IMG/VR virus record: IMGVR_UViG_3300040801_001224
Span: 124,001 to 188,000 of that record
Reading direction: 5' to 3' (one strand)
Length of the DNA stretch: 64,000 bases
Position numbers and translations under genes: made by a program. Under the pieces are notes generated by a model that worked only from the letters and a program-made list of their open reading frames with translations, made no database searches and was not told the origin of the DNA. This document shows positions 3,155 through 60,215 of the stretch, piece after piece (within the stretch, counting starts at the first letter, position 1; every line of letters starts with the position of its first letter).

Positions 3155-3183
3155 TTGACACTACCACATTTATCCTGTATACT
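3155..3183 (+). promoter_or_regulatory. sigma70 promoter
   Basis: TTGACA-17-TATACT. Confidence 0.8.
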
Positions 3184-3211
3184 GTAACACACTATAGTAA
3201 CGGAGGGATAA

Positions 3212-3757
3212 ATGAATACACCCAAGCAAGAAAACATTGTTAATACAGTACTCAGAGTACGCAATCCCGAGGGTCTAAAGGACCTGCAACAAAACATTGA
3301 TATCGCAATCCATAATATTTATGAAAACCGGGCGGTTATGGTTGCCGATTTCCGTAAAGAATTATTCGCAAATAAAGTAAGTAATGAATATTTTAGTAAC
3401 TGGAACATGTCTGAAGATGGCACTGTGACGGTAAAACAGAAAAGTCCAAAGAAGCCACCATCTAGTGGCCCATTTAATGCTGTGACACAAGATTATAGCT
3501 ATGACATAAAAGAATATAATAATTTAATACGCTATGCTTATAGAAAGGTGATAGGCAACTTACAAAACGCAAAGCGTTCAGTTGATATGGCAATTAAATA
3601 TGACGGTGAAGTAGATATCCCTGGTGATGTGCTAAATAACATTGAGTTCTTTGGAAACGAACCAGAGAGCAGAAAGAAAGTGAAAGATTTCGGTGAGAGA
3701 GCCGTAAGTAAATTTTTTAAGAATCGTACTAATAGAAATAAAACCCAAGCTTGGTAA
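3212..3757 (+). CDS. Hypothetical protein
   Basis: 181-aa ORF with GGAGG RBS. Confidence 0.75.
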   Translation: MNTPKQENIVNTVLRVRNPEGLKDLQQNIDIAIHNIYENRAVMVADFRKELFANKVSNEYFSNWNMSEDGTVTVKQKSPKKPPSSGPFNAVTQDYSYDIKEYNNLIRYAYRKVIGNLQNAKRSVDMAIKYDGEVDIPGDVLNNIEFFGNEPESRKKVKDFGERAVSKFFKNRTNRNKTQAW

Positions 3758-3767
3758 GGAAAATATA

Positions 3768-4901
3768 ATGGCTAAGGCTAAAGCAAAACGAGTTAAATTA
3801 ACCAACGCATTCCGTTGTGATAACTTAAAGTTGGATAGCAAAACATACGACTTTGACTTAGAAACGGCATTGTATAAGATCCACTATAACATGTCCAACA
3901 AAGACATCACTAAGGAAGCAGTCACTTATGCCAAGCAGATGAAAGAGTATAAGAAAGTGCCTTTCAGCATGGTTAGTGATTATGACTTCCGGGTTGTGGG
4001 AAAATATTTAACTGTCCTTAACCGTGGTGGGGAACTCAAGCCAGACACACTTGAGCGTATCCTTAAGATGCTTGCCGAACTTGCGGAAAAAGCAAAGCGA
4101 ATTTCAGCAGAGAAGAAAGCGGCAGAAAAGGCGGCAGAAGAAGCCAAGGGTAAAGTGAAGGTGCTCAGTATTCAGGATCGCCTACGTATGCGAGCTGAAG
4201 AAGTTGCCGGTGAAGAATTCGAAGGCTTAGTTGATGAATTAGTGACTGATCCCAAGTCCTTTGATCTTAAAAAGTTTGACCCAGTTGGCAAGATGCACCT
4301 GAATGAACTCAAGCAAGGACACTTGCGCTACATAATTAAAATGTATGAACCTCAGATTAAAGAGCTTGAAGAATTCCTGGAAGGCAATGATCCTGACTTA
4401 AAAGAAGGCTATTCATACTTGGGCAGAACTGGTGCTAAGAAGCTTATCAAGTTTTATCAAGCTATTGCTGATGGCGCAAACATGATTATCACTAAGTCCA
4501 AAGCCACACGTAAGCCACGCAAGAAAGCGGCAAAGCCGGCTGATAAAGTTATTGAGAAACTAAAGTATAAGAAGGATGATCAAGCACTCAAGATCGCAAG
4601 TGTCAATCCTATTGACATACTTGGCGCCAAAGAAGTCTGGGTTTATAACACCAAACAACGCAAGGTTGGGGTATATAAGGCTTTTGATGAAACTGGCTTG
4701 TATGTTAAGGGAACATCAATTACAAACTTTTCCAAAGACAATAGTAAGCAGAGAACGCTACGCAAACCACAAACACAGTTGCGTGAATTCAAAGGTACCA
4801 CTGCCAAATTAAATAAGGCGTTCAACGCTATCACAACAGTTGATACGAAATTGACTGGTCGAATGAATGATCAGATCATTATATTGAGGATATTCAAATG
4901 A
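3768..4901 (+). CDS. Conserved phage hypothetical protein (basic)
   Basis: 377 aa; C-terminal WVYNTKQRK..VKGTSI..RTLRKP..GRMN pattern seen in T4-like phages. Confidence 0.75.
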   Translation: MAKAKAKRVKLTNAFRCDNLKLDSKTYDFDLETALYKIHYNMSNKDITKEAVTYAKQMKEYKKVPFSMVSDYDFRVVGKYLTVLNRGGELKPDTLERILKMLAELAEKAKRISAEKKAAEKAAEEAKGKVKVLSIQDRLRMRAEEVAGEEFEGLVDELVTDPKSFDLKKFDPVGKMHLNELKQGHLRYIIKMYEPQIKELEEFLEGNDPDLKEGYSYLGRTGAKKLIKFYQAIADGANMIITKSKATRKPRKKAAKPADKVIEKLKYKKDDQALKIASVNPIDILGAKEVWVYNTKQRKVGVYKAFDETGLYVKGTSITNFSKDNSKQRTLRKPQTQLREFKGTTAKLNKAFNAITTVDTKLTGRMNDQIIILRIFK

Positions 4902-5176
4902 GCAATGATTTAGACGATCTTTCTAAGGCTATTGCTCGTGGAATCTCCGGTGGCGTTATGGGTGTACTGTTTGTCTTTGGTATAGCTTTTCTCATCATTG
5001 GCGTTATTTCCAGTATGTTTACGTCTTATGATTCCACTGACGATGAACGCAACGGTGTTCGGTCTGGCTTAGTACTACACATAGATCACGGTACTGGCTG
5101 TCAATATTTGAGTAAACCAGGCGCAGGTTTGACCCCACGATTAGATGATCGTGGCGAACAGATCTGTGATAAATAA
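4898..5176 (+). CDS. Small membrane-anchored protein
   Basis: One TM helix; DHGTGCQYL...GLTPRLD motif. Confidence 0.7.
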   Translation: MSNDLDDLSKAIARGISGGVMGVLFVFGIAFLIIGVISSMFTSYDSTDDERNGVRSGLVLHIDHGTGCQYLSKPGAGLTPRLDDRGEQICDK

Positions 5177-5182
5177 TTTGCT

Positions 5183-5302
5183 ATGGATATATTTGGAATA
5201 ATATTAATGTCAATAATTTTGTCTGTTCTTGTTGTAGGGCTGTGGTGGTCTTTATACGAGATGGGTAAACTGGAAAAGGACGATAATTCTTCAGAAGAGT
5301 AG
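5183..5302 (+). CDS. 39-aa membrane peptide (absent from the ORF track)
   Basis: MDIFGIILMSIILSVLVVGLWWSLYEMGK..., 7 nt after GATAAATA at 5168. Confidence 0.55.
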   Translation: MDIFGIILMSIILSVLVVGLWWSLYEMGKLEKDDNSSEE

Positions 5303-5328
5303 ATAAATACTACAAACGGAGAATTATT

Positions 5329-6081
5329 ATGTCAGCAACACCAGAGCCAAGAACAGAGATTATTAATCAGGTCAAACTGCTATTAGCAGATCAGATGATT
5401 GATCTAGAAGCAGATCCTGAACACTACAATCTTGCTATTGACATGGCTATTGAAAAGCTACGTCAAGCATCTGACGGAGCAAACGAAGAAGCAAATCTAT
5501 TCTTCACTCTTCAGCCAGAACAGACAGAGTACACATTGCCGGACGAAGTACAAAACATCAGACGTCTATACAGACGCGGTGTAGGTGCTAATACTACTGG
5601 CGGCACAAACTTTGATCCATTCGAAGCGGCATTTAGTAACATATATTTGCTACAGGCTGGACGTACCGGTGGCCTTGCTACGTGGGATTTATTTGCCCAG
5701 TTCCAGGAGTCAATTGGTCGTGTGTTTGGATCTGAAATTAATTTTACGTGGAACCCTTCAACTAAAAAGCTAAAGATTATACGTCGAATTCAACATGAAG
5801 AAGATATTAGTATTTTAGCATACATACAAAAGCCAGAACATGTAATGATACGTGACCCTTACATGCGTCCCTGGATACGTGATTACGCTAAAGCACAAGT
5901 TAAAATGATGGTTGGTGAAGCACGTAGCAAGTTCACAGGCGGTTTACCAGGACCAAACGGCAACGTAATCCTTAATGGTGCTGACTTAAAGAACGAAGCC
6001 ATCCAAGAAATTGAAGTATTAGAACAACAACTAAGAGATATTGTAACTGGTGATGCAGGTTACGCATTCTTAATAGGATAA
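5329..6081 (+). CDS. Neck/head-tail connector protein (T4 gp13-like)
   Basis: WIRDYAKA..K..GEARSKF..LPGPNG.V.LNG..LK.EA..E pattern; late promoter at 5302. Confidence 0.8.
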   Translation: MSATPEPRTEIINQVKLLLADQMIDLEADPEHYNLAIDMAIEKLRQASDGANEEANLFFTLQPEQTEYTLPDEVQNIRRLYRRGVGANTTGGTNFDPFEAAFSNIYLLQAGRTGGLATWDLFAQFQESIGRVFGSEINFTWNPSTKKLKIIRRIQHEEDISILAYIQKPEHVMIRDPYMRPWIRDYAKAQVKMMVGEARSKFTGGLPGPNGNVILNGADLKNEAIQEIEVLEQQLRDIVTGDAGYAFLIG

Positions 6082-6087
6082 AATGTT

Positions 6088-6555: not shown

Positions 6556-6584
6556 AATAACACAGCAAAAGGACACAGTAACCG

Positions 6585-7555: not shown

Positions 7556-7562
7556 AAATCAC

Positions 7563-7591
7563 TTGACATTTTCCTCCCTTTTTGCTATAAT
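7563..7591 (+). promoter_or_regulatory. sigma70 promoter
   Basis: TTGACA-17-TATAAT. Confidence 0.85.
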
Positions 7592-7620
7592 ATAGAATCT
7601 ATAAAAGGAGAATAATATCT

Positions 7621-8259
7621 ATGATCGTAGGAATACTTGGTCTCAAAGGCGCTGGCAAGGATACAATAGGCGATTATCTTGTTGAAAATTATGGTTTTGA
7701 AAAAGTAAGTTTTGCCTCAGCTCTTAAAGATGCCACTGCCGCCATTTTTGGTTGGGACAGAGATATGTTAGAAGGGAATACACCTGAAGCACGTGAACAG
7801 AGAGAACAACCTGACGAGTTTTGGTCAGAGAAGTTAGGATATGATTTTACACCACGTTACGCCTTACAGTACATTGGCACAGACGTAATGCGTAAGAACT
7901 TTTATGATGGTATTTGGATTGCGGCACTTGAAAAGAAACTATCAAACCCAGACAAAGACTATGTAATTACAGATGTGCGTTTCCCAAATGAAGTAACCTT
8001 ATTGAAGAATTTGGGTGCGACATTAGTGGAAGTACAGCGTGGTGAACAACCAGAATGGATGGAGTTAGCATCTAAAGCAAACGCTGGTGATAAAGACGCT
8101 CAGCATCAGATGTATATGAATTTCAAGGATGTTCACATCTCAGAATGGGCATGGGCCGGTTCAGACGTCAATGTTGTTATTCCCAATGATGAAACGTTTG
8201 AAGAATTATATGATAAAATTGAGGTTCAAGTTAAAGAGCCATTCTTTAACCAAGCGTAA
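7621..8259 (+). CDS. Deoxynucleoside monophosphate kinase
   Basis: GLKGAGKDT P-loop; PRYALQYIGTDVMR; ITDVRFPNE. Confidence 0.93.
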   Translation: MIVGILGLKGAGKDTIGDYLVENYGFEKVSFASALKDATAAIFGWDRDMLEGNTPEAREQREQPDEFWSEKLGYDFTPRYALQYIGTDVMRKNFYDGIWIAALEKKLSNPDKDYVITDVRFPNEVTLLKNLGATLVEVQRGEQPEWMELASKANAGDKDAQHQMYMNFKDVHISEWAWAGSDVNVVIPNDETFEELYDKIEVQVKEPFFNQA

Positions 8260-11290: not shown

Positions 11291-11322
11291 GTCTATATTT
11301 ATCTTAACTGATAAATAGTGTT

Positions 11323-11823
11323 ATGAAGATAAGCGAGATACATACAACTAGTCCACAAGGGAGAGACTTTAATAAATGGGATAAGAACGAGTATTCAGAC
11401 AGGACTCCTTTTAACCCAGAGGATAAGAAAGACTTCCAGTATGTTGGCAAGAAAGGTCAACTGAGTGTATGGCACGACAGAGAGAACCCAGGTATATTCA
11501 CAGCATTCTCTGGTAAGAAATGGGCGATGGCTGTGACTACTAAAAAGACTAAATTTGGTAGACAGATTGCCACAACAACTAGCAGTCCAGAGTTTCGTGG
11601 ATTCAAGATGGCGCAATTTCTGTATAAACTTATCGCAAAAAAGACGGGAAGTCTAGCAAGCGACTCAATACTATCACCAGTAGCCAACAGTATGTGGCAG
11701 AGTTTTGAAGGTGACTCACAGGTAGAGTTAGAAGTAGTTGACAGAAACACAGGCAAATCTCGTCCATACGAAGGAGATTTAGATGATACTGTGTCCTTTG
11801 TTTATCGCATCATTCCAAACTAA
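11323..11823 (+). CDS. GNAT-fold acetyltransferase-like protein with MKISEI tag
   Basis: SPEFRGFKMAQFLY...LASDSILSPVANSMWQSF resembles the GNAT acetyl-CoA loop and downstream helix. Confidence 0.6.
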   Translation: MKISEIHTTSPQGRDFNKWDKNEYSDRTPFNPEDKKDFQYVGKKGQLSVWHDRENPGIFTAFSGKKWAMAVTTKKTKFGRQIATTTSSPEFRGFKMAQFLYKLIAKKTGSLASDSILSPVANSMWQSFEGDSQVELEVVDRNTGKSRPYEGDLDDTVSFVYRIIPN

Positions 11824-15297: not shown

Positions 15298-15322
15298 TGT
15301 CATCTGATGATAAATAAAAAAT

Positions 15323-15703
15323 ATGGCATACTCAGATAAAGTTATTGATCATTATGAAAATCCACGTAACGTCGGCTTTATTGAAGAAGACGGCGATGGC
15401 ATTGTTGGTACTGGCATGGTCGGTGCCCCGGCCTGTGGTGACGTAATGAAATTGCAGATCAAAGTAGACAACGATGGTATCGTCAAAGACGCAAAGTTCA
15501 AAACCTATGGCTGTGGCTCAGCAATCGCATCCAGTTCATTAGTCACAGAATGGGTAAAAGGAAAACCGGTAGACGAAGTAGCTGAAATTAAAAATACCCA
15601 AATAGCTGAAGAGTTATGTCTCCCACCAGTCAAAATACACTGCTCAGTACTCGCAGAAGACGCAATTAAATCAGCAATTAGCGATTATAAGTCAAAACTA
15701 TAA
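15323..15703 (+). CDS. iscU: Fe-S scaffold IscU
   Basis: YSDKVIDHYENPRNVG, GAPACGDVM, YGCGSAIASSS, LPPVKIHCS. Confidence 0.97.
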   Translation: MAYSDKVIDHYENPRNVGFIEEDGDGIVGTGMVGAPACGDVMKLQIKVDNDGIVKDAKFKTYGCGSAIASSSLVTEWVKGKPVDEVAEIKNTQIAEELCLPPVKIHCSVLAEDAIKSAISDYKSKL

Positions 15704-15705: not shown

Positions 15706-15734
15706 TTGACATAACCACTATTTTCCTGTATAAT
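15706..15734 (+). promoter_or_regulatory. sigma70 promoter (leaderless start at 15741)
   Basis: TTGACA-17-TATAAT. Confidence 0.85.
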
Positions 15735-15740
15735 ACGTTT

Positions 15741-15980
15741 ATGAAAGATAGACTTAACCAAGAAGTAATTGTGGGTGACTACGTGTGTACGATAACAAAA
15801 GGTTATCGTGATCTTGTGTTCTGTAAGGTAATTGCTCTAACACCAAAGAAGATCAAGGTTGAATACAATCACCCAAACATTAAAAATCACATGATAGAAA
15901 CTACAGTGTTTCCAGAGCAAGCTGTAAAAATTGATGAGGAACTGGCAATGGCATACTTGTTGGGAGCAGGAGCTGAGTGA
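15741..15980 (+). CDS. Small SH3/KOW-like hypothetical protein
   Basis: MKDRLNQEVIVGDYV..KVIALTPKKIKV. Confidence 0.7.
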   Translation: MKDRLNQEVIVGDYVCTITKGYRDLVFCKVIALTPKKIKVEYNHPNIKNHMIETTVFPEQAVKIDEELAMAYLLGAGAE

Positions 15981-16601: not shown

Positions 16602-16683
16602 GTAAATACACATAACTAATCCAAGGAGGTATTCATAATGACGACCCTATAACGCTGAAGAAGCATACTTAAGGAGAATCATT

Positions 16684-17049
16684 ATGAATAGAACATACTT
16701 AGAGCGTCAGCATCTGACTGAACGCTACCAAGCACGACAAGCAAATACCCATAAGATATTCTATGGGCCATATCAAGACCCAGATCGCAGGCCAGAATTT
16801 CAGTTCCTGTGCGCTATTAGTGACGGCAGTCAATTCCCATATCGACTAAACTACAATCCCACTAAAAGAGAACTAGGACACTGGCGTAAGCACACACCTT
16901 TCGGCTGCTCATGCCATATGTGTAGATCTGTAAGAGCGTGGGAGAAAGCATCTGATACTAACTGGGATAATCCCCGTCGAAGAAAAATCCGCAAAGAAGA
17001 GCTGGCTTATCAGGAAGGCCTAGAAGAGTATTATTCTGATGATAAATAG
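16684..17049 (+). CDS. Arg-rich CSCxxC protein
   Basis: AAGGAG RBS; TPFGCSCHMCR; PRRRKIRK. Confidence 0.7.
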   Translation: MNRTYLERQHLTERYQARQANTHKIFYGPYQDPDRRPEFQFLCAISDGSQFPYRLNYNPTKRELGHWRKHTPFGCSCHMCRSVRAWEKASDTNWDNPRRRKIRKEELAYQEGLEEYYSDDK

Positions 17050-17053
17050 TAGT

Positions 17054-17548
17054 ATGACAAAAAAATTAGAAGAGTTCTTCGATTTAGATTCCGCAGATGA
17101 AGAAACTGTAGAAGAAGAATCATTAGAAGATATAATAGAACACGCTAAGGAAGAGCGTACTGAGTTAATGACAGCACTCACCAACTCAGAAAAAATCAAT
17201 CAGGCACTACCTGCTATAGGTAGTATTGACGAGCATGATACTGAAATGGATGATATTGCTAAAATGGCAATCGATACCTTCCATGAGCTTCATGATATTG
17301 GTATGAACGTGAGTGATGCCCATACTGGCAAGGTATTTGAGGTGGCGGCAACACTGCTAAAGACCGCACTGGACGCCAGAGATGCTAAGGTTAACAGAAA
17401 GTTAAAGCAGATTGAGTTAATGATTAAAAAGCAGAAGCTGGATGCCGATACAGGTGAAATAGATTCACCGCAAGGTGAAGAATTTGACAGAAATGAACTA
17501 CTAAAAGCGTTTCTTGATAACAAAAATAATCAGGAAAGTGATAAATAG
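17054..17548 (+). CDS. Probable terminase small subunit (gp16-like)
   Basis: Helical; KVFEVAATLLKTALDA...FDRNELLK; leaderless start MTKKLEE after GATAAATA at 17041; upstream of terL. Confidence 0.6.
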   Translation: MTKKLEEFFDLDSADEETVEEESLEDIIEHAKEERTELMTALTNSEKINQALPAIGSIDEHDTEMDDIAKMAIDTFHELHDIGMNVSDAHTGKVFEVAATLLKTALDARDAKVNRKLKQIELMIKKQKLDADTGEIDSPQGEEFDRNELLKAFLDNKNNQESDK

Positions 17549-19472: not shown

Positions 19473-21038
19473 ATGGATGAATCGTTAGTCAAAAAAGCCT
19501 TTAAGAAAGTACGGTATACACCACAACAACTAGAAGAATTAAAAAAATGTATGCACCCGGACACTGGTCCGATGTACTTCATGGAAACGTTCATGAAGAT
19601 ACAGCATCCTACCAAAGGTGAAATCCCTTTTGAGCCATTCGAATACCAACATGAACTAGTAGAATCTTATCACAAGTTTAAATACTCAATCGCTATGATT
19701 GGTAGACAGCTAGGTAAAACTACGGTTGCGGCAGGCTACTTACTGTGGTATGCGATGTTTGTGAACGACAGTCATATACTTATTGCGGCACACAAATATG
19801 ATGGTGCTCTAGAGATTATGGATCGTGTACGCTTTGCTTATGAAGGATTGCCAGATCATATCCGTGCTGGTGTGCGTGAATACAACAAAAAATCATTAAA
19901 GTTTGATAACGGTTCAGTTATTGAATCACAAGCAACAACAACAAACACTGGGCGTGGTAAATCTCTTTCATTAATATACTTGGACGAGTTTGCGTTCGTG
20001 GAGCCCCGTATTGCGAAAGAATTCTGGACAGCGATATCACCGACACTAAGTACTGGTGGTAAGTGTATGATTACTTCAACGCCAAACACTGACGAAGATC
20101 AGTTCGCACATATCTGGTTTGAAGCATTAAAAGTTACTGATGAGTATGGAAACAAGATACGTAACGTTGGTAAGAATAATTTTAAAGCATTCCACGCCAC
20201 ATGGGAAGCCCACCCGGATCGTGATGAAGAATGGGCTGAAATAGAACGAAGTAAAATTGGCGAGGATCGTTTCAAAAGGGAACATGAATGTGAATTTATT
20301 TCATTCGAAGAGACTCTAATTAATCCAGTTAAATTAGCAAAGCTTGACGCAAAACAACCCATCTATGTTGACGGACATGTGCGTTGGTATAAAGAGATAG
20401 ATCCAAACAAAACATATGTTGTTGGACTAGACCCAAGTATGGGTACTGGTGGTGACAATTCAGCAATACAAGTATTAGAAGTTCCCACAATGGAACAAGT
20501 AGGTGAATGGCAACATAATAAAACACCAGTAGAAGGACAGGTCCGTGTTCTTAAACAGGTATGTAATAAGCTACATAATGCTGGCGTAAGTGATATATAC
20601 TGGTCAGTAGAATCCAATACCCTAGGCGAAGCAATCCTTGTGATCATACGAGACACCGGCGAGGAAACAATACCAGGAACGTTCCTTCACGATCAACGCA
20701 GAGACTTAGGCATGAAGCACAGACGCAAAGGCTTCATCACAACACACAAATCAAAGCTAGAAGCATGTGCTAGATTGAAATCATGGCTAGAGAGTGATAA
20801 GCTAAAAATTAGCTCACAAAACCTATTACAAGAATTAAAAATGTTTGTTGCTAAAGGCAACAGCTATGAAGCAAAGACAGGTGAGAAAGACGACCTAGTG
20901 ATGTCAATGATACTTGTAATACGTATGGCCATAGCAATCGCAACGTTCGATGACAGAGCATATAACGCCATTAATTCAAATATTGACTATGATGAAGATG
21001 GTGAATACTCAGCACCCATGCCAATAGTAATGATATAA
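19473..21038 (+). CDS. terL: Terminase large subunit (gp17-like)
   Basis: GRQLGKTT, LIYLDEFAF, ITSTPN, GLDPSMG, KDDLVMS. Confidence 0.97.
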   Translation: MDESLVKKAFKKVRYTPQQLEELKKCMHPDTGPMYFMETFMKIQHPTKGEIPFEPFEYQHELVESYHKFKYSIAMIGRQLGKTTVAAGYLLWYAMFVNDSHILIAAHKYDGALEIMDRVRFAYEGLPDHIRAGVREYNKKSLKFDNGSVIESQATTTNTGRGKSLSLIYLDEFAFVEPRIAKEFWTAISPTLSTGGKCMITSTPNTDEDQFAHIWFEALKVTDEYGNKIRNVGKNNFKAFHATWEAHPDRDEEWAEIERSKIGEDRFKREHECEFISFEETLINPVKLAKLDAKQPIYVDGHVRWYKEIDPNKTYVVGLDPSMGTGGDNSAIQVLEVPTMEQVGEWQHNKTPVEGQVRVLKQVCNKLHNAGVSDIYWSVESNTLGEAILVIIRDTGEETIPGTFLHDQRRDLGMKHRRKGFITTHKSKLEACARLKSWLESDKLKISSQNLLQELKMFVAKGNSYEAKTGEKDDLVMSMILVIRMAIAIATFDDRAYNAINSNIDYDEDGEYSAPMPIVMI

Positions 21039-21073
21039 CATTAATGTGATAAATACATTAAAGGAGTAAGGGC

Positions 21074-23270: not shown

Positions 23271-23299
23271 TTGACATAAATACAAATACAGTGTATAAT
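23271..23299 (+). promoter_or_regulatory. sigma70 promoter with a nested late-like CATAAATA
   Basis: TTGACA-17-TATAAT. Confidence 0.85.
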
Positions 23300-23438
23300 G
23301 TCTGTACATGTTAAGCATGTTATGGATTTTATGCTGTACTCGCCTGTATTTATGCGGATACAGGATCGAGTTCGACTAAGTAACACACGGGAGTGTTACT
23401 TGACAGGGATACGCATCAATATTAAGGAGAATTATATT

Positions 23439-34681: not shown

Positions 34682-34710
34682 TTGACAAATAGCTCATACT
34701 CCTGTATAAT
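34682..34710 (+). promoter_or_regulatory. sigma70 promoter inside an RBS-sequestering inverted repeat
   Basis: TTGACA-17-TATAAT; CTCATACTCC/GGAGTATGAG. Confidence 0.85.
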
Positions 34711-34727
34711 AACAAAATATATGGAGT

Positions 34728-35768
34728 ATGAGTTTGGTTACAGAACAAGAAATAGCTGACAGAATACACAGGGAAGTACTAGGGCTACTAGGTCCACTCA
34801 AATCAGTACCTTCAGGTTGGCAAAAGCAAAATTGTAAATTATGTCATCATCGCGGTCATGGACATGACAAGCGTGAACGATTCGGTGTGATTAGACATAA
34901 CGATGGCTCTGTAGTTGTGAATTGCTTTAACTGTGGCTTCAGCAGTAGTTGGACACCAGGCAAAACCCTATCTAAGTCTTTTAAATGGTTTTTAGAAACA
35001 ATTGGCATGAGCAAGTATGATGTCAAACGTTTAGACTTTGAGTTATATAAGCTACGTAACAACATGAAGACTGGCTCCACTCTAAAGATGTCACGTGATG
35101 TCACAAAGGAATGGAAAGAAGTTGAGCTACCCAAAGGTTCTAAGACTATTAGGGAATGGGCTGAAGAAGGCTGTACAGACGAAAACTTTTTAGGTGTAGT
35201 ACAGTACCTAGTTGACAGGGACTTGCTCTATCCTGACACGTTCTATTGGACACCTAAAGACTTAATGTATAAGAACAGAGCTACCTATCCATTTATATAT
35301 GATGGCAAGATAGTAGGTTATACTGGACGTTATGTTAAAGAAATAAAAGACAAGAAGATGCCCAAGTATCACGCTGAAACACCAGAAAGCTTTTTAACTA
35401 ACCTGGATAGACAAAAGCGTGAAGACAAGAAGTTTGTAATACTTACGGAAGGTGTGTTTGACGCACATGTTGTAGATGGTGTTGCCGTTCTTGGAAATAA
35501 CCTAACTGCTGACCAGATAAGTATTATTGAACGACTAGGTAAAGAAATCATTGTAGTGCCTGACAAAGACAAAGACGGGCAATTATTATTTGACACAGCT
35601 ATAGAACATGGCTGGACAATTAGTACGCCAGACTGGGGGGCAGGTGTTAAAGACCCAGCAGGTGCTGTAGAAAAATATGGACGTATTTTAACAGTACAGA
35701 GCATTATTGAATCAAGGGACAAGAACGCCTTTGCGGCAAAACTCAAAAGGAAATTGGATAAGTTTTAA
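34728..35768 (+). CDS. DNA primase (gp61-like)
   Basis: Zn finger CKLC..CFNC; TOPRIM LTEGVFDA, VPDKDKDG, KDP. Confidence 0.93.
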   Translation: MSLVTEQEIADRIHREVLGLLGPLKSVPSGWQKQNCKLCHHRGHGHDKRERFGVIRHNDGSVVVNCFNCGFSSSWTPGKTLSKSFKWFLETIGMSKYDVKRLDFELYKLRNNMKTGSTLKMSRDVTKEWKEVELPKGSKTIREWAEEGCTDENFLGVVQYLVDRDLLYPDTFYWTPKDLMYKNRATYPFIYDGKIVGYTGRYVKEIKDKKMPKYHAETPESFLTNLDRQKREDKKFVILTEGVFDAHVVDGVAVLGNNLTADQISIIERLGKEIIVVPDKDKDGQLLFDTAIEHGWTISTPDWGAGVKDPAGAVEKYGRILTVQSIIESRDKNAFAAKLKRKLDKF

Positions 35769-43004: not shown

Positions 43005-43085
43005 ATTGACTCCACATTCTGTAATAATCTTGTTATCACAAAACAATGATAAATACGATTAATATAATAATGGAGAATAACCACA

Positions 43086-43547
43086 ATGGTACAAAGAATT
43101 CACGGTGCGGCAACCGCAATGCAGAATTTGACAGAGAATATTACCTACTACAAAGTGTATGCTCTATCAATAGGCGCAACTACAGACCCTTTAACAGCTG
43201 GCCAGGTTAATATCCATCAGACAGGCAACATTCAAGACGAAAGCCAAAAGAATTTTGAAGTACTAATACAGAGCATCGCTTTACGTGCCATGCCTGTAGT
43301 TATGAACGCACCGGTTGCTGTTTCAAATGTGGCTAATGAAGGGGCGGCAGAAATGAGCGGTGAAGGATATGTGTGGAAATTCGCTGTTGAACGTTCGGAC
43401 TATTTTACAAATGACGGCCCAAATGGAACTTTAGGTCCGGTTGGTTTCTTAGTTGATGAAATTGATGGCATTGTGTTGCCAAACGCAACAGTGTTAAGCA
43501 CGAGTGGAGCAGACCAGAACATTGAGTTTCAGGTATCGGAGTTTTAA
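43086..43547 (+). CDS. Virion structural protein (MVQRIHG)
   Basis: Late promoter at 43048; N-terminus similar to the previous gene. Confidence 0.7.
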   Translation: MVQRIHGAATAMQNLTENITYYKVYALSIGATTDPLTAGQVNIHQTGNIQDESQKNFEVLIQSIALRAMPVVMNAPVAVSNVANEGAAEMSGEGYVWKFAVERSDYFTNDGPNGTLGPVGFLVDEIDGIVLPNATVLSTSGADQNIEFQVSEF

Positions 43548-48014: not shown

Positions 48015-48043
48015 TTGACATAAACCCCATATAGTGCTATAAT
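48015..48043 (+). promoter_or_regulatory. sigma70 promoter (leaderless start at 48049)
   Basis: TTGACA-17-TATAAT. Confidence 0.85.
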
Positions 48044-48048
48044 GCGCT

Positions 48049-48726
48049 ATGAAGTTAAACGTTAGATACGAATACAAATCCCTAAAACAGATAAATTCTA
48101 AGACTGGGCCTAGAGTCTATGACGTTGGTGAAGATCGCAAACTTCCTAGCGTAACCACAATCTTATCTGCCACAAAGCCCAAGGAAGATCTACAGGCACT
48201 TAAAGACTGGCGTAAGCGTGTTGGTGATGAAGAAGCCAACCGAGTTACCAAGCAGTCTACGAGCATGGGATCTGACATGCACGATAACCTGGAGAAGTAC
48301 ATCCTCACAGAAGGCAAAGCTGATCTCAAAGGCGTTATGCTTGCTAAGATGATGACCAAGCTGGTCATTAAAAATGGATTATCAAAAGTAGATGAGGTAT
48401 GGGGGACAGAAGCACAACTCTATTACCCAGAACTCTACGCCGGTACAACGGACTTAGTTGGAATATGGAACGGTAAACCAGCCATAATGGATTTTAAGAA
48501 TAGTCGCAAGACAAAGAAAGAAGAATGGATTGAAGACTACAAGTATCAGCTAGTTGCTTACGCAATGGCCCACAATGAACTATTTGGTACTGATATCAAA
48601 ACCGGTGTTATTATGATGGCAACCCATGGATTGGAATATCAGGAGTTTGTTTTAGAAGGTAAGGAATTTGATAAGTATAAGCAGTTATGGTTAAATCGTG
48701 TCTATCAATACTATGAAAATGCGTAA
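48049..48726 (+). CDS. PD-(D/E)XK exonuclease (Cas4/RecB-like)
   Basis: LPSVTTIL, YAGTTDLV, IMDFKNS, QLVAYAMA. Confidence 0.9.
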   Translation: MKLNVRYEYKSLKQINSKTGPRVYDVGEDRKLPSVTTILSATKPKEDLQALKDWRKRVGDEEANRVTKQSTSMGSDMHDNLEKYILTEGKADLKGVMLAKMMTKLVIKNGLSKVDEVWGTEAQLYYPELYAGTTDLVGIWNGKPAIMDFKNSRKTKKEEWIEDYKYQLVAYAMAHNELFGTDIKTGVIMMATHGLEYQEFVLEGKEFDKYKQLWLNRVYQYYENA

Positions 48727-53550: not shown

Positions 53551-53579
53551 TTGACAAACGCAAGCATATGTAGTATAAT
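53551..53579 (+). promoter_or_regulatory. sigma70 promoter (leaderless start at 53586)
   Basis: TTGACA-17-TATAAT. Confidence 0.85.
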
Positions 53580-53585
53580 ACGCAT

Positions 53586-54287
53586 ATGTTTGATAATCTT
53601 AAAAAATGGTGGAATTACGAGCCACCCGATTACGCCACTTCAGAAGAATGGAATGCTCACGACCGGTCTTTTAGAGAAAATGCTCCCATTAGATATTTCT
53701 TAAATGAGACCCTAAGTAAGTATTACATGCGCTATTGTTACCATCCTATTGTTAGCCCAGTGAAAGACAGGGTACACAAAATAATGTGTCGCATATTACC
53801 CTGGCGACAACATAATGTTATTAGAATAAAAACCCATGGAGCCACATGGCATGACAAGGATTATGTTATGCTCCATGGCATGTTTGCTCTCCTTGTTGAT
53901 TTTGTGGAAGTTGAAAAAGCTTGGATGGAGTGTCTCTCAGATGAGGGTAAACTGCGAAAAATGCCCTGGTACAAGCGGCCGTTCTTTCGTTCACGTGAAC
54001 TTGGCCTAAAATATCTTGATGATGAAGCAATGCTTGATCAAGATCCACAGAGCCAATTGTATGGTAATCCGGCATGGGATGCCGATGGTAATCCCAGTCA
54101 AGCAGAAAGCGCACGACAGCAGAGACGATTGTATCTATGGTGGAAGGATGATTACCTAAAGCGTGTTGATCCGTATGAGATGGAGCTCACAACGGCAGAA
54201 CTATTAAAACTGGAAACCGAGCGATTTAATGAAGAGCAAGAAGCTCTCCAAATGCTAGTTAAGATACGAGCTCACCTTTGGACTTGA
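53586..54287 (+). CDS. Conserved hypothetical protein
   Basis: WHDKD..LH..F.LLVDFVEVE; LYLWWK; KIRAHLWT. Confidence 0.8.
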   Translation: MFDNLKKWWNYEPPDYATSEEWNAHDRSFRENAPIRYFLNETLSKYYMRYCYHPIVSPVKDRVHKIMCRILPWRQHNVIRIKTHGATWHDKDYVMLHGMFALLVDFVEVEKAWMECLSDEGKLRKMPWYKRPFFRSRELGLKYLDDEAMLDQDPQSQLYGNPAWDADGNPSQAESARQQRRLYLWWKDDYLKRVDPYEMELTTAELLKLETERFNEEQEALQMLVKIRAHLWT

Positions 54288-54312
54288 CAAACCCACCATT
54301 CTATAGTATAAT
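54284..54312 (+). promoter_or_regulatory. sigma70 promoter (leaderless start at 54319)
   Basis: TTGACA-17-TATAAT. Confidence 0.85.
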
Positions 54313-54318
54313 AACATT

Positions 54319-55095
54319 ATGAAATTACGCATACTATCAGATCTACACATGGAGTTCGGACCGTTCGAGGTGCCGGTATTGCCTGATGATCCAGAAACCA
54401 CATTGGTCTTAGCTGGAGATATAAATGTGGGTACAATGGCATACAAGTTTGTAGAAGAGATGTGTGAACGTTTCTATGAAGTTATCTATTGCCCTGGCAA
54501 TCACGAGTACTATAACCAAGACATGGACCACATTAGAGAATGGTGGGCAGATCACACTATTGGCAATCTAACGTTTCTTGATGACACCGCAACAGTACTC
54601 GCTGATAACGACGACGATGTTCTAATTGTAGGTGGCACATTGTGGACAGACTTCATGATAGATGGCAAAGATAGTGAATGGTTTTCTAAATTTAGGGCAA
54701 AACAGGGTATGAATGATTACCATGCTATAGTTCAAAACGGTGTTCTAATTACGCCCGATGATACGGTCGAGTACCATAACAAAACTAAAGAATTTATTAT
54801 TGAACAATTGAATGCTGTGAATACTGAAAAGAAGATCGTAATAACACACCACTTGCCACACCCAATTTGTATAGATCCCAAGTTTAAGAATAGCCCTCTT
54901 AATGCGGCGTTTGCGAGTGATCTAACAGAAATATTTGAAATGGACAATGCTCCTGATTTATGGATACATGGCCATACGCACACACCAGTGGATGTCATGG
55001 TGAATAATACCCGTATACTATGTAACCCAGGTGGCTACCCTACTCGCGAACGAGCGAACAATAATCATAACCCAATTTTAACGGTGGAAATATAA
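54319..55095 (+). CDS. Calcineurin-like metallophosphoesterase
   Basis: SDLH, AGDI, GNHEYY, THH, HGHTH. Confidence 0.93.
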   Translation: MKLRILSDLHMEFGPFEVPVLPDDPETTLVLAGDINVGTMAYKFVEEMCERFYEVIYCPGNHEYYNQDMDHIREWWADHTIGNLTFLDDTATVLADNDDDVLIVGGTLWTDFMIDGKDSEWFSKFRAKQGMNDYHAIVQNGVLITPDDTVEYHNKTKEFIIEQLNAVNTEKKIVITHHLPHPICIDPKFKNSPLNAAFASDLTEIFEMDNAPDLWIHGHTHTPVDVMVNNTRILCNPGGYPTRERANNNHNPILTVEI

Positions 55096-56279: not shown

Positions 56280-56280
56280 A

Positions 56281-57877: not shown

Positions 57878-57886
57878 GGAGAAGAA

Positions 57887-58378
57887 ATGTACGTATCAAC
57901 CAAAAGTTATGGGCCAAGTGAAGGCTTCGCTGTTTGTTATAGACAATGGAAGGCAGACAGAAAAGAAGGTGGTTCAGGCCCATATCCACACAATGAGATT
58001 CCAGGATGCTGTGCCTTACATGGCTACGCCCTAAGTTTTTATTTCGAGTTTGAATGTGAAACACTCGACGCACGTAACTGGGTCGTAGATTTTGGTGGCT
58101 TGAGATCATTTAAAGAATTTCTTAAAGAAACCTTTGATCACACAATGCTTGTGGCTGAAGATGATCCAGAGTTCGAAACATTCCAGTTATTACACGATAA
58201 AGCAATGGCTAAAATGGTTGTAGTTGAAAAGACTGGCTGTGAAGCATTAGCTGAGTTTTTGGTAAACTATCTGAACGAAATCTGGCTTCCAGAGAATTAT
58301 GGTAACAGAACTGATATTCGTTGCCGTAAAGCGGAAGTCCGTGAAACACCGAGTAACTCTGCATTTTATGAGCTTTAA
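57887..58378 (+). CDS. queD: 6-pyruvoyl-tetrahydropterin synthase / QueD
   Basis: C..LHGY, WVVDFG, FDHT, GCEALA, VRET..NSA. Confidence 0.88.
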   Translation: MYVSTKSYGPSEGFAVCYRQWKADRKEGGSGPYPHNEIPGCCALHGYALSFYFEFECETLDARNWVVDFGGLRSFKEFLKETFDHTMLVAEDDPEFETFQLLHDKAMAKMVVVEKTGCEALAEFLVNYLNEIWLPENYGNRTDIRCRKAEVRETPSNSAFYEL

Positions 58379-58784
58379 AGAAGACAGACCGTTTGTATGC
58401 GCTCAGACATTATTGTATGATGCCATGCTCAAACACCCAACAGTGACCAGGTATATATCTGAGGATCAGTTCTGTAAGGATATATACTCGTCACTGACTA
58501 ACTCTAATGTGATCTTAGACTTGGACAAAATGGACCTGTCTGAAGAAGATCGCAAGGAAATGTTTAGTCAAGTTATTAAATATGAAGATGGGTTAGACGC
58601 AAGTATGAGTTTCAGGAGTGCCGGTGGATTCGTTGCTGGACTACGCAATGAGTTGATTGGCACCAATGAGGACTATATGGACTGGTATTGTTCACAGGGT
58701 GAAGGATACTTATCAGCAACAATAGAAGTCATATATGACGAGTTTGGCATTAAATGGTCAGAATGGCGAGATTATCGCCCATAA
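58368..58784 (+). CDS. Conserved hypothetical protein
   Basis: SFRSAGGFVAGLR...DYMDWYCS..EG. Confidence 0.75.
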   Translation: MSFKEDRPFVCAQTLLYDAMLKHPTVTRYISEDQFCKDIYSSLTNSNVILDLDKMDLSEEDRKEMFSQVIKYEDGLDASMSFRSAGGFVAGLRNELIGTNEDYMDWYCSQGEGYLSATIEVIYDEFGIKWSEWRDYRP

Positions 58785-58805
58785 TTCATGGTAAATACTT
58801 AAACT

Positions 58806-60215
58806 ATGTTATTTGTTTTATTAGTATTTGTGGTCGCACTGTTTGTCGCAATAACTGCGGCATGGTTCAGTATTATTGGTTTAATGGCAATTTTTGCTGG
58901 TTCAGCAATATCCATTGCTGTCATGGCTGGTGGTTTAGAAGCCGCCAAACTACTAACAGCAAGTTGGTTGTATAGGAACTGGGATGAATCTCCAGGAGCA
59001 TTAAAATATCCACTTACCGCTATGACTGTGATATTGATGATTATCACAAGCTTGGGTATATTTGGATTCTTGTCCAAAGCACATATTGAGCAAGGTGCGC
59101 CGGTTGGCAACAATATTGCTAAGATTGAACGTCTCGACCAGAGAATAGCAAGAGAGCAAAAAATTGTTGACGATGCCACTTCTGTTGTGTTACAATTAGA
59201 CGATGCTGTAAAAACTCTTATTGAATACGATAGAATACGTGGGCCTAACGGTAGCATTGCGGTACGTGAATCTCAGAAAGAGGAACGTGCCACATTAAGT
59301 GCTACGATAGACGAGGCGCAGGATAACATAGATAAACTTACTGATGAAAAGTTTGCCCTGCAAAGTGAAGTTAGAGCGTTTGAGGTTGAAGTAGGACCAA
59401 TTAAATATGTAGCTGATATTATATACGGTCCTGATGCTGGTAAGACAGCAATCGAATCAGCGGTTCAGTGGTTGATTATAATTATTATATTTGTATTTGA
59501 CCCTTTAGCTATTTTGCTATTGATTGCGGCCAACTATTCATTAATTGATTATGGATTAAAGTTGAGACCAAAAGATGAACGTGAAAAGATCAGGCAGAAG
59601 TACTCTAATAAATCTGGTGATGAAACTAAACCGAATGGAGAGAATCCAAAGGAAATTAGGCAACAAGCCCAACATGTTGATGACCAAGAGGAATCATCAG
59701 TTAGCGAAGCTGACGGATTGGAAAAATCAGGAGTGGTATTAGATGAGACAGAAAGTTTGGATACATCCGTCAGTACAAGTGAAACTGGACCACTTGAACA
59801 TGAAGGCGGCCTGGAGAAGGATACAGAGGCGGGAACAGAAGCTGGAGAAAGTTCAGAGCAAGATGCCAGTGAAAGCGGAGAGAGTGAAGTCACTAATGAG
59901 GGAACCATCACCAATCAGGATGACAAACCTGATAGCGAATGGGATGGATATGATGAACAAGAAGCAGAAGAAAGAATGAACATCATAGCCCAGAACGGTA
60001 ATGATGGGCTACACTATGATGAAGTTGAAGAACCAACTGAAGACGTTCGAGAAAAAATGAGAGACGCAGTTGAACGTCTAAAGAAGAAACAAGAAAAGCC
60101 ACCAGTTATAGGGGGTGGCGTTGTGTTAAGTAAAACCGACGACAAAGTTATAGACAACCAGCCGAGAGGCATAAGAGGCTGGTTATTATCAGACAAACAA
60201 CATAAGGAAGACTAA
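58806..60215 (+). CDS. Multi-pass membrane protein with coiled coil and acidic disordered tail
   Basis: 3 N-terminal TM segments, GIFGFLSKAH, EVGPIKY, IIFVFDPLA. Confidence 0.8.
   Translation: MLFVLLVFVVALFVAITAAWFSIIGLMAIFAGSAISIAVMAGGLEAAKLLTASWLYRNWDESPGALKYPLTAMTVILMIITSLGIFGFLSKAHIEQGAPVGNNIAKIERLDQRIAREQKIVDDATSVVLQLDDAVKTLIEYDRIRGPNGSIAVRESQKEERATLSATIDEAQDNIDKLTDEKFALQSEVRAFEVEVGPIKYVADIIYGPDAGKTAIESAVQWLIIIIIFVFDPLAILLLIAANYSLIDYGLKLRPKDEREKIRQKYSNKSGDETKPNGENPKEIRQQAQHVDDQEESSVSEADGLEKSGVVLDETESLDTSVSTSETGPLEHEGGLEKDTEAGTEAGESSEQDASESGESEVTNEGTITNQDDKPDSEWDGYDEQEAEERMNIIAQNGNDGLHYDEVEEPTEDVREKMRDAVERLKKKQEKPPVIGGGVVLSKTDDKVIDNQPRGIRGWLLSDKQHKED

What the first reader, a model, noticed from the sequence alone, without database searches (positions are those of the whole stretch)
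3155..58811. Systematic promoter-inside-a-hairpin design that blocks translation from read-through transcripts in both temporal classes
Seen: at module boundaries an inverted repeat has its left arm in or upstream of the promoter and its right arm over the RBS/ATG. sigma70 cases: CATTTATCC 3167/GGATAAATG 3206; CTCCCTTTT 7574/AAAAGGAG 7603; CTCATACTCC 34693/GGAGTATGAG 34723 (primase); ATAGTGC 48031/GCGCTAT 48044; CAAGCATATG 53561/CATATGTTTG 53583. Late cases: ATAATTCTTC 5283/GGAGAATTAT 5318; TGTCAT/ATGGCA (iscU); CATGCC 21017/GGCATG 21071 with inner TTAATGT/ACATTAA; CTCCA/TGGAG before 43086; CATGGT/ACTATG before 58806. Known: T4 uses this design for a few late genes (e, soc, 49, I-TevI). Inference: here it also works in reverse, silencing early genes on late read-through RNA, which lets early and late modules interleave on one strand with few terminators.
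Basis: partly seen in the sequence, partly recalled or inferred. Interest (0 to 1): 0.72.

Follow-up and report, generated by a model that had tools for sequence, protein, structure and literature searches.

The report
Promoter-in-hairpin and leaderless translational insulators
In this uncultured 328-kb jumbo phage, three gene junctions in the window (eight genome-wide) hide the ribosome-binding site in read-through RNA but not in RNA started at the gene's own promoter, as in phage T4; the design is not systematic, and many more junctions instead place the start codon at the predicted transcription start (leaderless).

Summary
Only three of the ten junctions beat the controls: 3155 (sigma70-type), 34682 (sigma70-type, primase) and 5302 (late-type, gp13-like neck/adaptor).

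At these three, opening the translation start costs 12-17 kcal/mol in read-through RNA. It costs 0.5-3 kcal/mol in RNA started at the predicted own start site. Metagenomic relatives keep the occlusion at all three orthologous junctions, although the arms have changed.

Genome-wide, 8 of 133 SD-led promoter junctions have this switch, against 0 of 218 promoterless junctions. Neither promoter class shows a shift as a whole, so "systematic" is not supported.

Junctions 7563, 21048, 43048, 58806 and iscU (15323) are at chance level. Junctions 48015 and 53551 have no RBS; their ATG lies 5-6 nt after the -10 element, which is leaderless geometry.

Leaderless geometry is the commoner device: 21 sigma70-type and 33 late-type junctions genome-wide. 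Primase is hairpin-controlled here and in relatives of 53-68% identity. It is leaderless in more distant relatives and in PA5oct.

Best reading: a T4 gene-e-type insulator used in both temporal directions at a few junctions, alongside widespread leaderless starts. Start sites and timing are inferred; no RNA data exist.

The parts
3155..3214 (+). Sigma70-type promoter inside a hairpin (junction A). -35 at 3155-3160; 5' arm 3167-3175 in the spacer; -10 TATACT at 3178-3183; predicted start site ~3190; SD 3202-3206; 3' arm 3206-3214, which includes ATG 3212. Controls a 181-aa gene of unknown function.
   Evidence: z -3.45. Orthologous junctions in L064, L065 and L066 keep read-through-specific occlusion (combined p 0.006). 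The upstream gene 2042-3145 ends 10 nt before the -35 with no terminator.
5283..5331 (+). Late-type promoter inside a hairpin (junction B). 5' arm 5283-5292; late motif GATAAATA 5302-5309; predicted start site ~5315; 3' arm 5318-5327 over the SD; ATG 5329. Controls the gp13-like neck/head-tail adaptor gene.
   Evidence: z -4.50. PHROG/Pfam: adaptor, Phage_T4_gp13 in orthologs. Orthologs keep occlusion through different arms (combined p 0.0016). One pair in the helix is G-U, which works only in RNA.
34682..34736 (+). Sigma70-type promoter inside a hairpin, upstream of DNA primase. -35 at 34682-34687; 5' arm 34693-34702 in the spacer; -10 at 34705-34710; predicted start site ~34717; 3' arm 34723-34732 covering SD GGAG and ATG 34728; conserved TTG at 34734 is the likelier true start.
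   Evidence: z -5.32. Six relatives of 53-68% identity keep an anti-SD arm in the spacer, extended differently in each lineage. The upstream gene 33841-34677 is a late-motif virion structural gene ending 5 nt before the -35.
48015..48051 (+). Sigma70-type promoter with leaderless geometry. -10 at 48038-48043, ATG 48049 five nt later (exonuclease). A small 7-8 bp hairpin has the -10 in its loop.
   Evidence: (z -2.98). No SD; the ATG is the first start in the ORF.
53551..53588 (+). Sigma70-type promoter with leaderless geometry. -10 at 53574-53579, ATG 53586 six nt later. A local hairpin joins the spacer to the ATG region.
   Evidence: opening 9.0 vs 4.1+/-2.0; z -3.65.
54284..54321 (+). Sigma70-type promoter with leaderless geometry, ATG 54319 (metallophosphoesterase).
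15706..15743 (+). Sigma70-type promoter with leaderless geometry, ATG 15741 (79 aa).
1172..1209 (+). Sigma70-type promoter with leaderless geometry, ATG 1207 (87 aa).
11310..11325 (+). Late motif followed by 5 nt and ATG 11323 (late-type leaderless geometry). A mirror-image copy on the minus strand (motif 11303-11296) serves ATG 11290.
15309..15325 (+). Late motif followed by 6 nt and ATG 15323 (NifU/IscU-like). No occluding hairpin.
   Evidence: (opening 1.1 vs 4.3).
17041..17056 (+). Late motif followed by 5 nt and ATG 17054 (late-type leaderless geometry).
58790..58808 (+). Late-like motif GGTAAATA followed by 8 nt and ATG 58806. No SD and no occluding hairpin. Possibly leaderless, but the spacing is atypical.
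   Evidence: opening 1.9 vs 4.1; z -0.60.
7563..7623 (+). Sigma70-type promoter of the dNMP kinase gene. The claimed 8-bp pairing is no better than chance.
   Evidence: -8.1 kcal/mol, mid-rank; opening 7.2 vs 4.8+/-1.0; z -0.08.
21017..21076 (+). Late-type promoter of a virion structural gene. The claimed pairing is at chance level.
   Evidence: opening 7.5 vs 6.0+/-2.5; z -1.68.
43048..43088 (+). Late-type promoter before 43086. The claimed 5-bp pairing is at chance level.
   Evidence: z -0.29.

Best explanation
The window belongs to a 328-kb uncultured jumbo phage distantly related to Pseudomonas phage PA5oct. It has about 100 sigma70-type promoters and about 90 T4-late-like promoters (tGATAAATA). 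These are interleaved mostly on one strand, with few terminators.

Hairpin device. At a minority of junctions (3155, 5302 and 34682 in the window; five more elsewhere, including rIIA and the tail sheath gene) an RNA helix of 10-17 bp joins two segments. One lies upstream of the gene's own start site; the other is its SD and start codon. RNA read through from the upstream gene contains both arms and should be poorly translated. RNA started at the gene's own promoter lacks the 5' arm and has an open start. This is the mechanism shown for T4 genes e and I-TevI. Here it also operates with sigma70-type promoters that sit downstream of late-type modules.

Leaderless device. A larger set of junctions (54 genome-wide) places ATG at the predicted +1. 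A 5'-terminal AUG can then be used only on the gene's own transcript. This would give the same dependence on the own promoter without any hairpin.

Shown here: the sequences, the predicted energetics, the specificity to promoter junctions, and conservation in relatives.

Inferred: start-site positions, the temporal classes, and the effect on translation.
For: - Own-versus-cross pairing: 4 of 73 sigma70 junctions reach -20 kcal/mol or lower, where the cross-pair frequency is 2e-4.
- Opening energy in read-through RNA is 12-18 kcal/mol against 0.5-4 in the own transcript, for eight junctions.
- Such switches occur at 8 of 133 promoter junctions and 0 of 218 promoterless junctions, p = 0.0004.
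- There are no terminators at the three window junctions.
- Primase junction: all seven lineages (this phage plus six relatives of 53-68% identity) have the helix, with lineage-specific arm extensions and one C:G to U:A exchange. Own arms pair better than swapped arms (p about 0.01). In 6 of 7 lineages no shuffle out of 100 reached the observed value.
- Junctions A and B: occlusion is retained in three relatives each through different arms (combined p 0.006 and 0.0016).
- G-U pairs in the helices point to RNA rather than DNA.
- Gene functions fit the temporal classes. Late motif: gp13-like adaptor, tail tube, tail sheath, structural proteins, terminase operon. Sigma70-type: primase, rIIA, SSB, dNMP kinase, exonuclease.
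- Leaderless geometry: ATG falls exactly 6 nt after TATAAT in 16 cases and none fall at 8-15 nt. ATG falls exactly 5 nt after GATAAATA in 27 of 125 motifs.
- 35 of the 54 leaderless ATGs are the first start in their ORF. One has an upstream SD-led alternative and five have a downstream one.
- The consensus T-A-T at the seventh base after the -10 marks the start site.
- Primase is leaderless in about 25 more distant relatives and in PA5oct.
- Hairpin or leaderless sigma70 junctions preferentially follow late-type promoters (p 0.0006; 0.008 without the early gene cluster).
Against: - No RNA data exist for this phage. Only DNA runs from a microbial mat hold it, so start sites and timing come from motif geometry.
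- No sigma region-2 homologue that could serve late promoters was found.
- Counting covariation in a fixed register is not significant with 7 sequences; the helix core is invariant.
- Late-type hairpin and leaderless junctions show no preference for following sigma70 promoters (p = 1).
- A-U-rich -10 elements just upstream of an internal AUG might still allow some SD-independent initiation on read-through RNA.
- PA5oct itself has few leaderless-geometry junctions, so the prevalence is specific to this lineage.
- Gene starts came from a home-made ORF caller.
Confidence: 0.6

Rival explanations
1. One reading: every module boundary in both temporal classes is built as a promoter inside a hairpin that masks the RBS.
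For: All quoted strings exist. Three of the cases are strong.
Against: There is no class-wide shift. Only 8 of 133 junctions switch. Five quoted cases are at chance level and two have no RBS.
Confidence: 0.05
2. By-product of composition. Promoter spacers are pyrimidine-rich (CCAC followed by a T-run) and SD regions are purine-rich, so pairing arises without selection or function.
For: The spacer consensus is G-poor and T/C-rich. Cross pairs average -7.3 kcal/mol, close to own pairs at -8.0. Most junctions are indistinguishable from chimeras.
Against: The eight outliers lie far outside the cross distribution. Switches are absent from 218 promoterless junctions. Occlusion persists at orthologous junctions after the arms have turned over.
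Confidence: 0.12
3. The helices are RNA processing or stability elements (for example RNase III sites, or 3'-end protectors of the upstream message), or weak terminators, rather than translational masks.
For: They sit at cistron boundaries of read-through RNA. T7 uses RNase III sites at comparable places (general knowledge).
Against: The 3' arm always covers the SD or start codon. Stems of 10-17 bp are short for RNase III. No consistent U-tract follows them in the seven primase lineages.
Confidence: 0.1
4. DNA-level element: a palindromic operator for a regulator that overlaps the promoter.
For: The inverted repeats overlap the promoters.
Against: Arms share no sequence between junctions. They always match their own translation start. 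They shift register between relatives. They include G-U pairs. Arm spacing of 8-30 nt is variable.
Confidence: 0.03

Closest known systems
T4 gene e (lysozyme), I-TevI, soc, gene 49, and Aeh1 mobE: a late promoter embedded in a hairpin that masks the RBS (review PMC3014915, read)
   Same: The 5' arm lies upstream of the proximal start site and the 3' arm lies over the SD and AUG. The upstream gene is co-directional with no terminator. The late promoter is TATAAATA-like. Junction 5302 (gp13-like gene) and genome junctions 117852 and 98799 fit this pattern directly.
   Different: Five of the eight cases have a sigma70-type promoter inside the hairpin (primase, rIIA and others), mostly downstream of late-type modules. 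This is the opposite temporal polarity. I know of no description of it, and my limited literature searches turned up none. The late motif is GATAAATA rather than TATAAATA. Nothing here has been tested experimentally.
Leaderless mRNAs such as lambda cI from PRM; ribosomes recognise a 5'-terminal AUG (Brock et al. 2008, cited in PMC5312081)
   Same: ATG falls at the predicted +1. There is no SD. The 54 leaderless starts are ATG; one low-confidence sigma70 case has an alternative GTG at offset 4.
   Different: The scale is much larger: about 54 junctions, or 30% of promoter-proximal genes, spread across two promoter classes in one phage. No such prevalence is reported for PA5oct, whose paper does not mention leaderless mRNAs. 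phiKZ had no leaderless transcripts (PMC8244752).
Pseudomonas phage PA5oct (Arenbergviridae), the closest cultured relative
   Same: Helicase is 59% identical. The order structural gene, sigma70 promoter, primase, helicase is the same. Transcription depends on host RNA polymerase, with TTGAC/TATAATA promoters and interleaved temporal regions (PMC7318152).
   Different: PA5oct primase has leaderless geometry (GTG 6 nt after the -10) and no hairpin. PA5oct has only a handful of leaderless-geometry junctions.

Membership tests
T4 gene-e-type promoter-in-hairpin translational control | Inverted repeat whose 3' arm covers the SD and/or start codon | tested here: met
   Met for 3155, 5302 and 34682, and for five junctions outside the window. 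Not met for 7563, 21048, 43048, 58806 and 15323.
T4 gene-e-type promoter-in-hairpin translational control | The proximal promoter fires downstream of the 5' arm, so the gene's own transcript lacks that arm | tested here: inconclusive
   Promoter geometry puts the 5' arms upstream of the predicted +1, and the own-transcript opening cost is 0.5-3 kcal/mol. No start site has been mapped, because no RNA runs exist.
T4 gene-e-type promoter-in-hairpin translational control | Read-through from an upstream co-directional gene of another temporal class | tested here: inconclusive
   No terminator is predicted at the three junctions. The upstream promoters are of the other motif class. Temporal classes are inferred only from motifs and gene functions.
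T4 gene-e-type promoter-in-hairpin translational control | Translation reduced on long transcripts compared with short ones | not testable with these tools
   This needs reporter assays or ribosome profiling.
T4 gene-e-type promoter-in-hairpin translational control | Structure conserved among relatives | tested here: met
   All seven primase lineages keep it (this phage plus six relatives), as do three relatives each for junctions A and B. Fixed-register covariation alone is not significant.
T4-type late transcription (gp55/gp33-dependent TATAAATA promoters) | A TATAAATA-like -10 element, with no -35, upstream of structural genes | tested here: met
   tGATAAATA lies upstream of the adaptor, tail tube, tail sheath and structural genes.
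T4-type late transcription (gp55/gp33-dependent TATAAATA promoters) | A phage-encoded gp55-like sigma factor | tested here: inconclusive
   Pfam Sigma70_r2 gives no match in the genome, but gp55 is too divergent for that model. No gp55-specific profile was searched.
Leaderless mRNA | Start site coincides with the A of the start codon | tested here: inconclusive
   There is a sharp positional peak: 16 ATGs at +6 after TATAAT and 27 at +5 after GATAAATA, with none at 8-15 nt after TATAAT and only one between 9 and 13 nt after the late motif. The consensus A at that position in SD-led promoters agrees. No 5'-end data exist.
Leaderless mRNA | No SD, and AUG as the start codon | tested here: met
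   The 54 leaderless starts are ATG, apart from one low-confidence sigma70 case with an alternative GTG at offset 4. The -10 element occupies the SD position. One of the 54 has an upstream SD-led in-frame start and five have a downstream one.

The most novel reading that the evidence does not exclude
Start-site choice licenses translation across this phage lineage. About a third of promoter-proximal genes (8 hairpin plus 54 leaderless, of 181) would be translatable only from their own promoter. Hairpin and leaderless solutions would be interchangeable over evolution, as at primase. This would let early and late genes be mosaically interleaved on one strand almost without terminators, and in particular would silence early and replication genes on late read-through RNA.
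Probability: 0.35. Interest if true: 0.75.

Novelty: new variant of a known kind. Interest (0 to 1): 0.55.

Why it matters
Phage genomes are usually described as having temporal modules separated by promoters and terminators. Here early-type and late-type promoters alternate every few kilobases on one strand, with few terminators, so late RNA must run through early genes and early RNA through late genes.

The data suggest that translation, rather than transcription termination, keeps the classes apart. Two devices appear to do this: a T4-style hairpin, used in both directions, and leaderless starts. Both tie translation to the promoter that made the RNA.

If confirmed, this would extend a textbook T4 curiosity to early genes. 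It would give a functional reason for abundant leaderless genes in a phage. It would also supply compact, portable parts for synthetic biology that are translated only from their own promoter.

There is a practical consequence for annotation. Gene callers that require an SD will mis-start dozens of genes in such phages. The primase start here is an example.

Tried and rejected
- Megablast of 8 kb against phage records found nothing.
- Metagenome and viral scans with the 377-aa neighbour protein found no relatives, or only 34%-identical ones.
- Scans with primase gave only relatives of about 42-47% identity. Those were useful solely for showing leaderless primase.
- The run search found only DNA runs from one microbial-mat sample. 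Laying their contigs on 2001-8000 showed the same phage at 3-5x depth with no variants in any arm, so they give no covariation evidence.
- Fixed-register pair counting on seven primase junctions was not significant.
- I tested whether plain SD junctions are insulated by terminators instead. Predicted terminators precede only 5-20% of junctions in every class, with no difference between classes.
- Sigma70_r2 search for a late sigma factor gave no match.
- Genome-wide leaderless geometry in PA5oct amounts to only a few cases, so the prevalence is not a family-wide trait.
- An outer helix between the late motif and codons 2-4 of the homing-endonuclease-like genes was suggested by the alignment fold. 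It appears in the MFE of only one of four copies and is not better than shuffles.
- The inverted repeat around the -35 element (AGTGG/CCACT) was considered as the real systematic hairpin. Stems of 6 bp or more occur in about 20 of 94 promoters, mostly paralogous early cassettes, so this was not pursued.

Full report
**What the window is.** The window is bases 124001-188000 of a single 328,096-bp virus contig with direct terminal repeats. It has no near relative among deposited phages. Its DnaB-like helicase is 59% identical to that of Pseudomonas jumbo phage PA5oct. Only DNA runs from one microbial-mat sample hold the sequence. The phage is therefore uncultured, and no RNA data exist for it. 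GC content is about 40%, and almost all genes in the window are on the + strand.

**Promoter inventory.**
- A scan for TTGACA-N16-18-TATAAT with at most one mismatch gives 109 sites, 101 of them on the + strand.
- These share an extended consensus: CCAC followed by a T-rich, G-poor spacer, and T-A-T centred on the seventh base after the -10 element, which marks the likely +1.
- A second motif, tGATAAATA(c), resembles the T4 late promoter TATAAATA. It precedes the gp13-like adaptor, tail tube, tail sheath and virion structural genes, and the operon that holds the large terminase.
- The sigma70-type promoters precede primase, rIIA, SSB, dNMP kinase, an exonuclease and a metallophosphoesterase.
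- I therefore call the two classes early/middle and late. This is an inference from motif and gene function.
- The two classes alternate along the + strand of the window.
- Convincing intrinsic terminators are rare, about seven in the 64 kb.

**Checking the observation.** All ten pairs of strings are at the coordinates given. Exact 9-nt inverted repeats with 8-70-nt loops occur 101 times in the genome and 71-95 times in Markov-simulated sequence. What matters is therefore position and strength, not the existence of a match. I used four controls.

1. *Duplex energy.* I computed pairing between each promoter region (everything upstream of the predicted +1) and each translation start, comparing own with cross pairs. 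Among 73 SD-led sigma70 junctions, four reach -20 kcal/mol or lower, where cross pairs do so at a frequency of 2e-4. One of the four is the primase junction at 34682. Junction 3155 follows at -14.1. The remaining junctions, including 7563, lie inside the cross distribution. Among 60 SD-led late junctions none falls outside the cross distribution; 5302 ranks best against its own cross pairs.

2. *Ensemble cost of opening the start (-13 to +3).* Read-through RNA was compared with the own transcript and with chimeras carrying other promoters of the same class. Neither class shifts as a whole (Wilcoxon p 0.26 and 0.63). Eight junctions stand out, at 12-18 kcal/mol in read-through RNA against 0.5-4 in the own transcript:
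   - sigma70-type: 17866, 115632 (rIIA), 127155 (window 3155), 158682 (window 34682), 286662;
   - late-type: 98799 (tail sheath, minus strand), 117852, 129302 (window 5302).

3. *Promoterless SD-led junctions.* None of 218 shows such a switch, against 8 of 133 promoter junctions (Fisher p = 0.0004).

4. *Dinucleotide-shuffle z-scores from the folding tool.*

| Stretch folded | z-score |
|---|---|
| 3160-3225 | -3.45 |
| 34688-34740 | -5.32 |
| 5278-5340 | -4.50 |
| 53556-53598 | -3.65 |
| 48025-48062 | -2.98 |
| 7568-7630 | -0.08 |
| 21012-21082 | -1.68 |
| 43030-43095 | -0.29 |
| 58775-58815 | -0.60 |

The iscU case is the NifU-like gene at 15323. It shows no occlusion.

Overall, three of the ten cases are solid. 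Two are small hairpins around a -10 element. Five are at chance level.

**Leaderless geometry.**
- At 48015 and 53551 there is no RBS to mask. The ATG lies 5-6 nt after the -10 hexamer, that is, at the predicted +1.
- This is general. For the strong sigma70 promoters, the first ATG that opens an ORF of at least 40 codons falls at offset 6 in 16 cases and at offsets 4-7 in 21-22 cases. None falls at offsets 8-15.
- For the late motif, an ATG opening at least 45 codons follows after exactly 5 nt in 27 of 125 occurrences. That is the same geometry if ATAAAT is read as the -10 hexamer.
- In 35 of the 54 cases this ATG is the first possible start in its ORF. Only one has an upstream in-frame start with an SD and five have a downstream one. 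The 54 starts are ATG, apart from one low-confidence sigma70 case with an alternative GTG at offset 4.
- PHROG alignments for the exonuclease, phosphoesterase and NifU-like proteins begin at residues 1-7.
- Window examples, sigma70-type: 1172, 15706, 48015, 53551, 54284.
- Window examples, late-type: 11310, 15309, 17041, possibly 58790, and 11303 and 8490 on the minus strand.
- Genome-wide the 181 promoter-gene junctions divide as follows: sigma70-type 68 SD, 21 leaderless, 5 hairpin; late-type 51 SD, 33 leaderless, 3 hairpin.

**Comparative evidence.** Protein searches found closer metagenomic relatives than the DNA scans had.

*Primase junction.*
- Six contigs with 53-68% identical primase all have TTGACA-N17-TATAAT, with the anti-SD string ATACTCC in the spacer pairing with GGAGTAT at the SD.
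- The helix is extended differently in each lineage: outward in this phage and in L060, L058 and L061; with a C:G to U:A exchange and wobble pairs in L059; inward into the -10 element in L056; and with the arm moved next to the -35 element in L062.
- Opening cost in read-through RNA is 13.6-20 kcal/mol, against 2.5-5.3 in the own transcript. In six of the seven lineages no shuffle out of 100 reached the observed value.
- Own arms pair better than arms swapped between lineages (about 1% of derangements do as well).
- Counting covariation in one fixed register is not significant, because the core is invariant and the registers differ.
- A TTG that aligns in five of the seven lineages (GTG in L061; L062 starts at an ATG), 6-8 nt after GGAG, is probably the true primase start (34734). 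The ATG at 34728 lies only one base after the SD.
- In the next relative (47% identity, L063), in about 25 more distant ones and in PA5oct, primase instead starts 6-7 nt after the -10 element. The upstream structural gene ends at or inside the promoter.
- The same junction is thus solved by a hairpin in one clade and by a leaderless start in its relatives.

*Junctions 3155 and 5302.*
- Three contigs whose neighbour protein is 86%, 69% and 60% identical keep the gene order and both promoters.
- Their arms differ. In L064 the start region pairs with the -10 element itself. In L065 the 5' arm lies upstream of the -35 element.
- Read-through-specific occlusion persists: 9.2, 11.6 and 13.6 kcal/mol for junction A, and 8.1, 10.0 and 9.1 for junction B, against 0.7-3.5 in the own transcripts. 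Combined p values are 0.006 and 0.0016.

**Context.**
- At 3155 the upstream gene ends 10 nt before the -35 element. At 34682 it ends 5 nt before. No terminator is predicted at any of the three junctions.
- Window region 1531-6081 reads late-type, then sigma70-type with hairpin, then late-type with hairpin.
- The same arrangement recurs around rIIA at genome 114.9-118.7 kb.
- Sigma70 junctions with a hairpin or a leaderless start are preceded by a late-type promoter in 18 of 24 cases, against 21 of 64 for plain SD junctions (p = 0.0006; 0.008 without the paralogous early cluster).
- Late junctions show no such bias.

**Mechanism.**
- The three window hairpins fit the mechanism established for T4 e and I-TevI (PMC3014915). 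Long RNA masks the start; RNA from the embedded promoter does not.
- G-U pairs and register turnover argue for RNA rather than a DNA operator.
- The absence of a consistent U-tract and the short stems argue against terminators or RNase III sites.
- What goes beyond T4 is the polarity. Sigma70-type promoters inside hairpins would keep primase, rIIA and others silent on late read-through RNA.
- Leaderless starts should have the same effect, because a 5'-terminal AUG is required for that initiation mode (Brock et al. 2008, cited in PMC5312081). That this is why they are so common here is my inference.

**Limits.**
- Start sites, timing and translation effects are all predicted.
- Gene starts come from a simple ORF caller.
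- The host is unknown.
- No gp55-like factor was identified.
- PA5oct has few leaderless-geometry junctions. Its paper does not mention leaderless mRNAs or hairpins.

**Verdict.** The design is real, conserved and bidirectional at three window junctions. It is not systematic, and the commoner device is the leaderless start.

Noticed in passing
window 34728-34736: The primase start is probably TTG at 34734, not ATG at 34728. The TTG aligns in five of the seven lineages and lies 7 nt after GGAG, whereas the ATG lies only 1 nt after the SD.
   Followed up: partly
window 1084-1168 (- strand); copies at G000 15025-15125, 230352-230452, 305745-305845: Four minus-strand singleton genes share a late motif and a conserved leader of about 55 nt, with a GTAGTC/GACTAC stem-loop and an ATACT/AGTAT hairpin at the SD. 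The window copy (440-1138) carries a NUMOD3 motif and so resembles a homing endonuclease. An outer helix between the late motif and codons 2-4 was suggested by the alignment fold but is not better than shuffles.
   Followed up: partly
sigma70-type promoters genome-wide; window example 62314-62340: Promoter spacers carry a conserved CCAC plus a T-run at about -26 to -15. About 20 promoters also have AGTGG just 5' of the -35 element, forming a stem with the -35 in its loop. At 62314-62340 this is a strong terminator-like hairpin (-16.8 kcal/mol) fused to the promoter. It is unclear whether CCAC is a promoter element or a terminator arm.
   Followed up: partly
window 16630-16690: A 12-nt perfect inverted repeat pairs a strong-SD mini-ORF (ATG plus three codons, then a stop) with the start region of gene 16684. 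Both arms lie downstream of a late-like motif at 16602. This may be a leader-peptide or translational-coupling switch.
   Followed up: no
G000 115593-115700 (outside the window): At the rIIA junction a second 12-bp repeat (starting at 115593) crosses the promoter-to-start helix in the order L1 < L2 < R1 < R2. The two are therefore either alternative structures or a pseudoknot.
   Followed up: no
window 1531-1593: A strong terminator-like hairpin (1556-1576 plus a T-run) lies between the late motif at 1531 and the gene start at 1593. Either this motif is not a promoter or its transcript is attenuated.
   Followed up: no
window 11296-11317: Two late motifs lie back to back on opposite strands, 6 bp apart. 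Each is followed after 5 nt by an ATG (11290 on the minus strand, 11323 on the plus strand), giving divergent leaderless late genes.
   Followed up: no
window 23275-23354: A 10-nt perfect inverted repeat has its left arm overlapping the -35 element and spacer of the SSB promoter (23271). Its right arm lies about 25-50 nt inside the SSB coding region, with a 60-nt loop. My start-region tests did not assess it.
   Followed up: no
L038 1478-1490 and 2356-2387 (PA5oct NC_071039.1): In PA5oct the proteomics-confirmed structural gene gp262 starts 5 nt after TATAAATA, and primase gp261 starts (GTG) 6 nt after TATAAT. The -35 element of that promoter overlaps the gp262 stop codon. This leaderless geometry is not discussed in the PA5oct paper.
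   Followed up: partly
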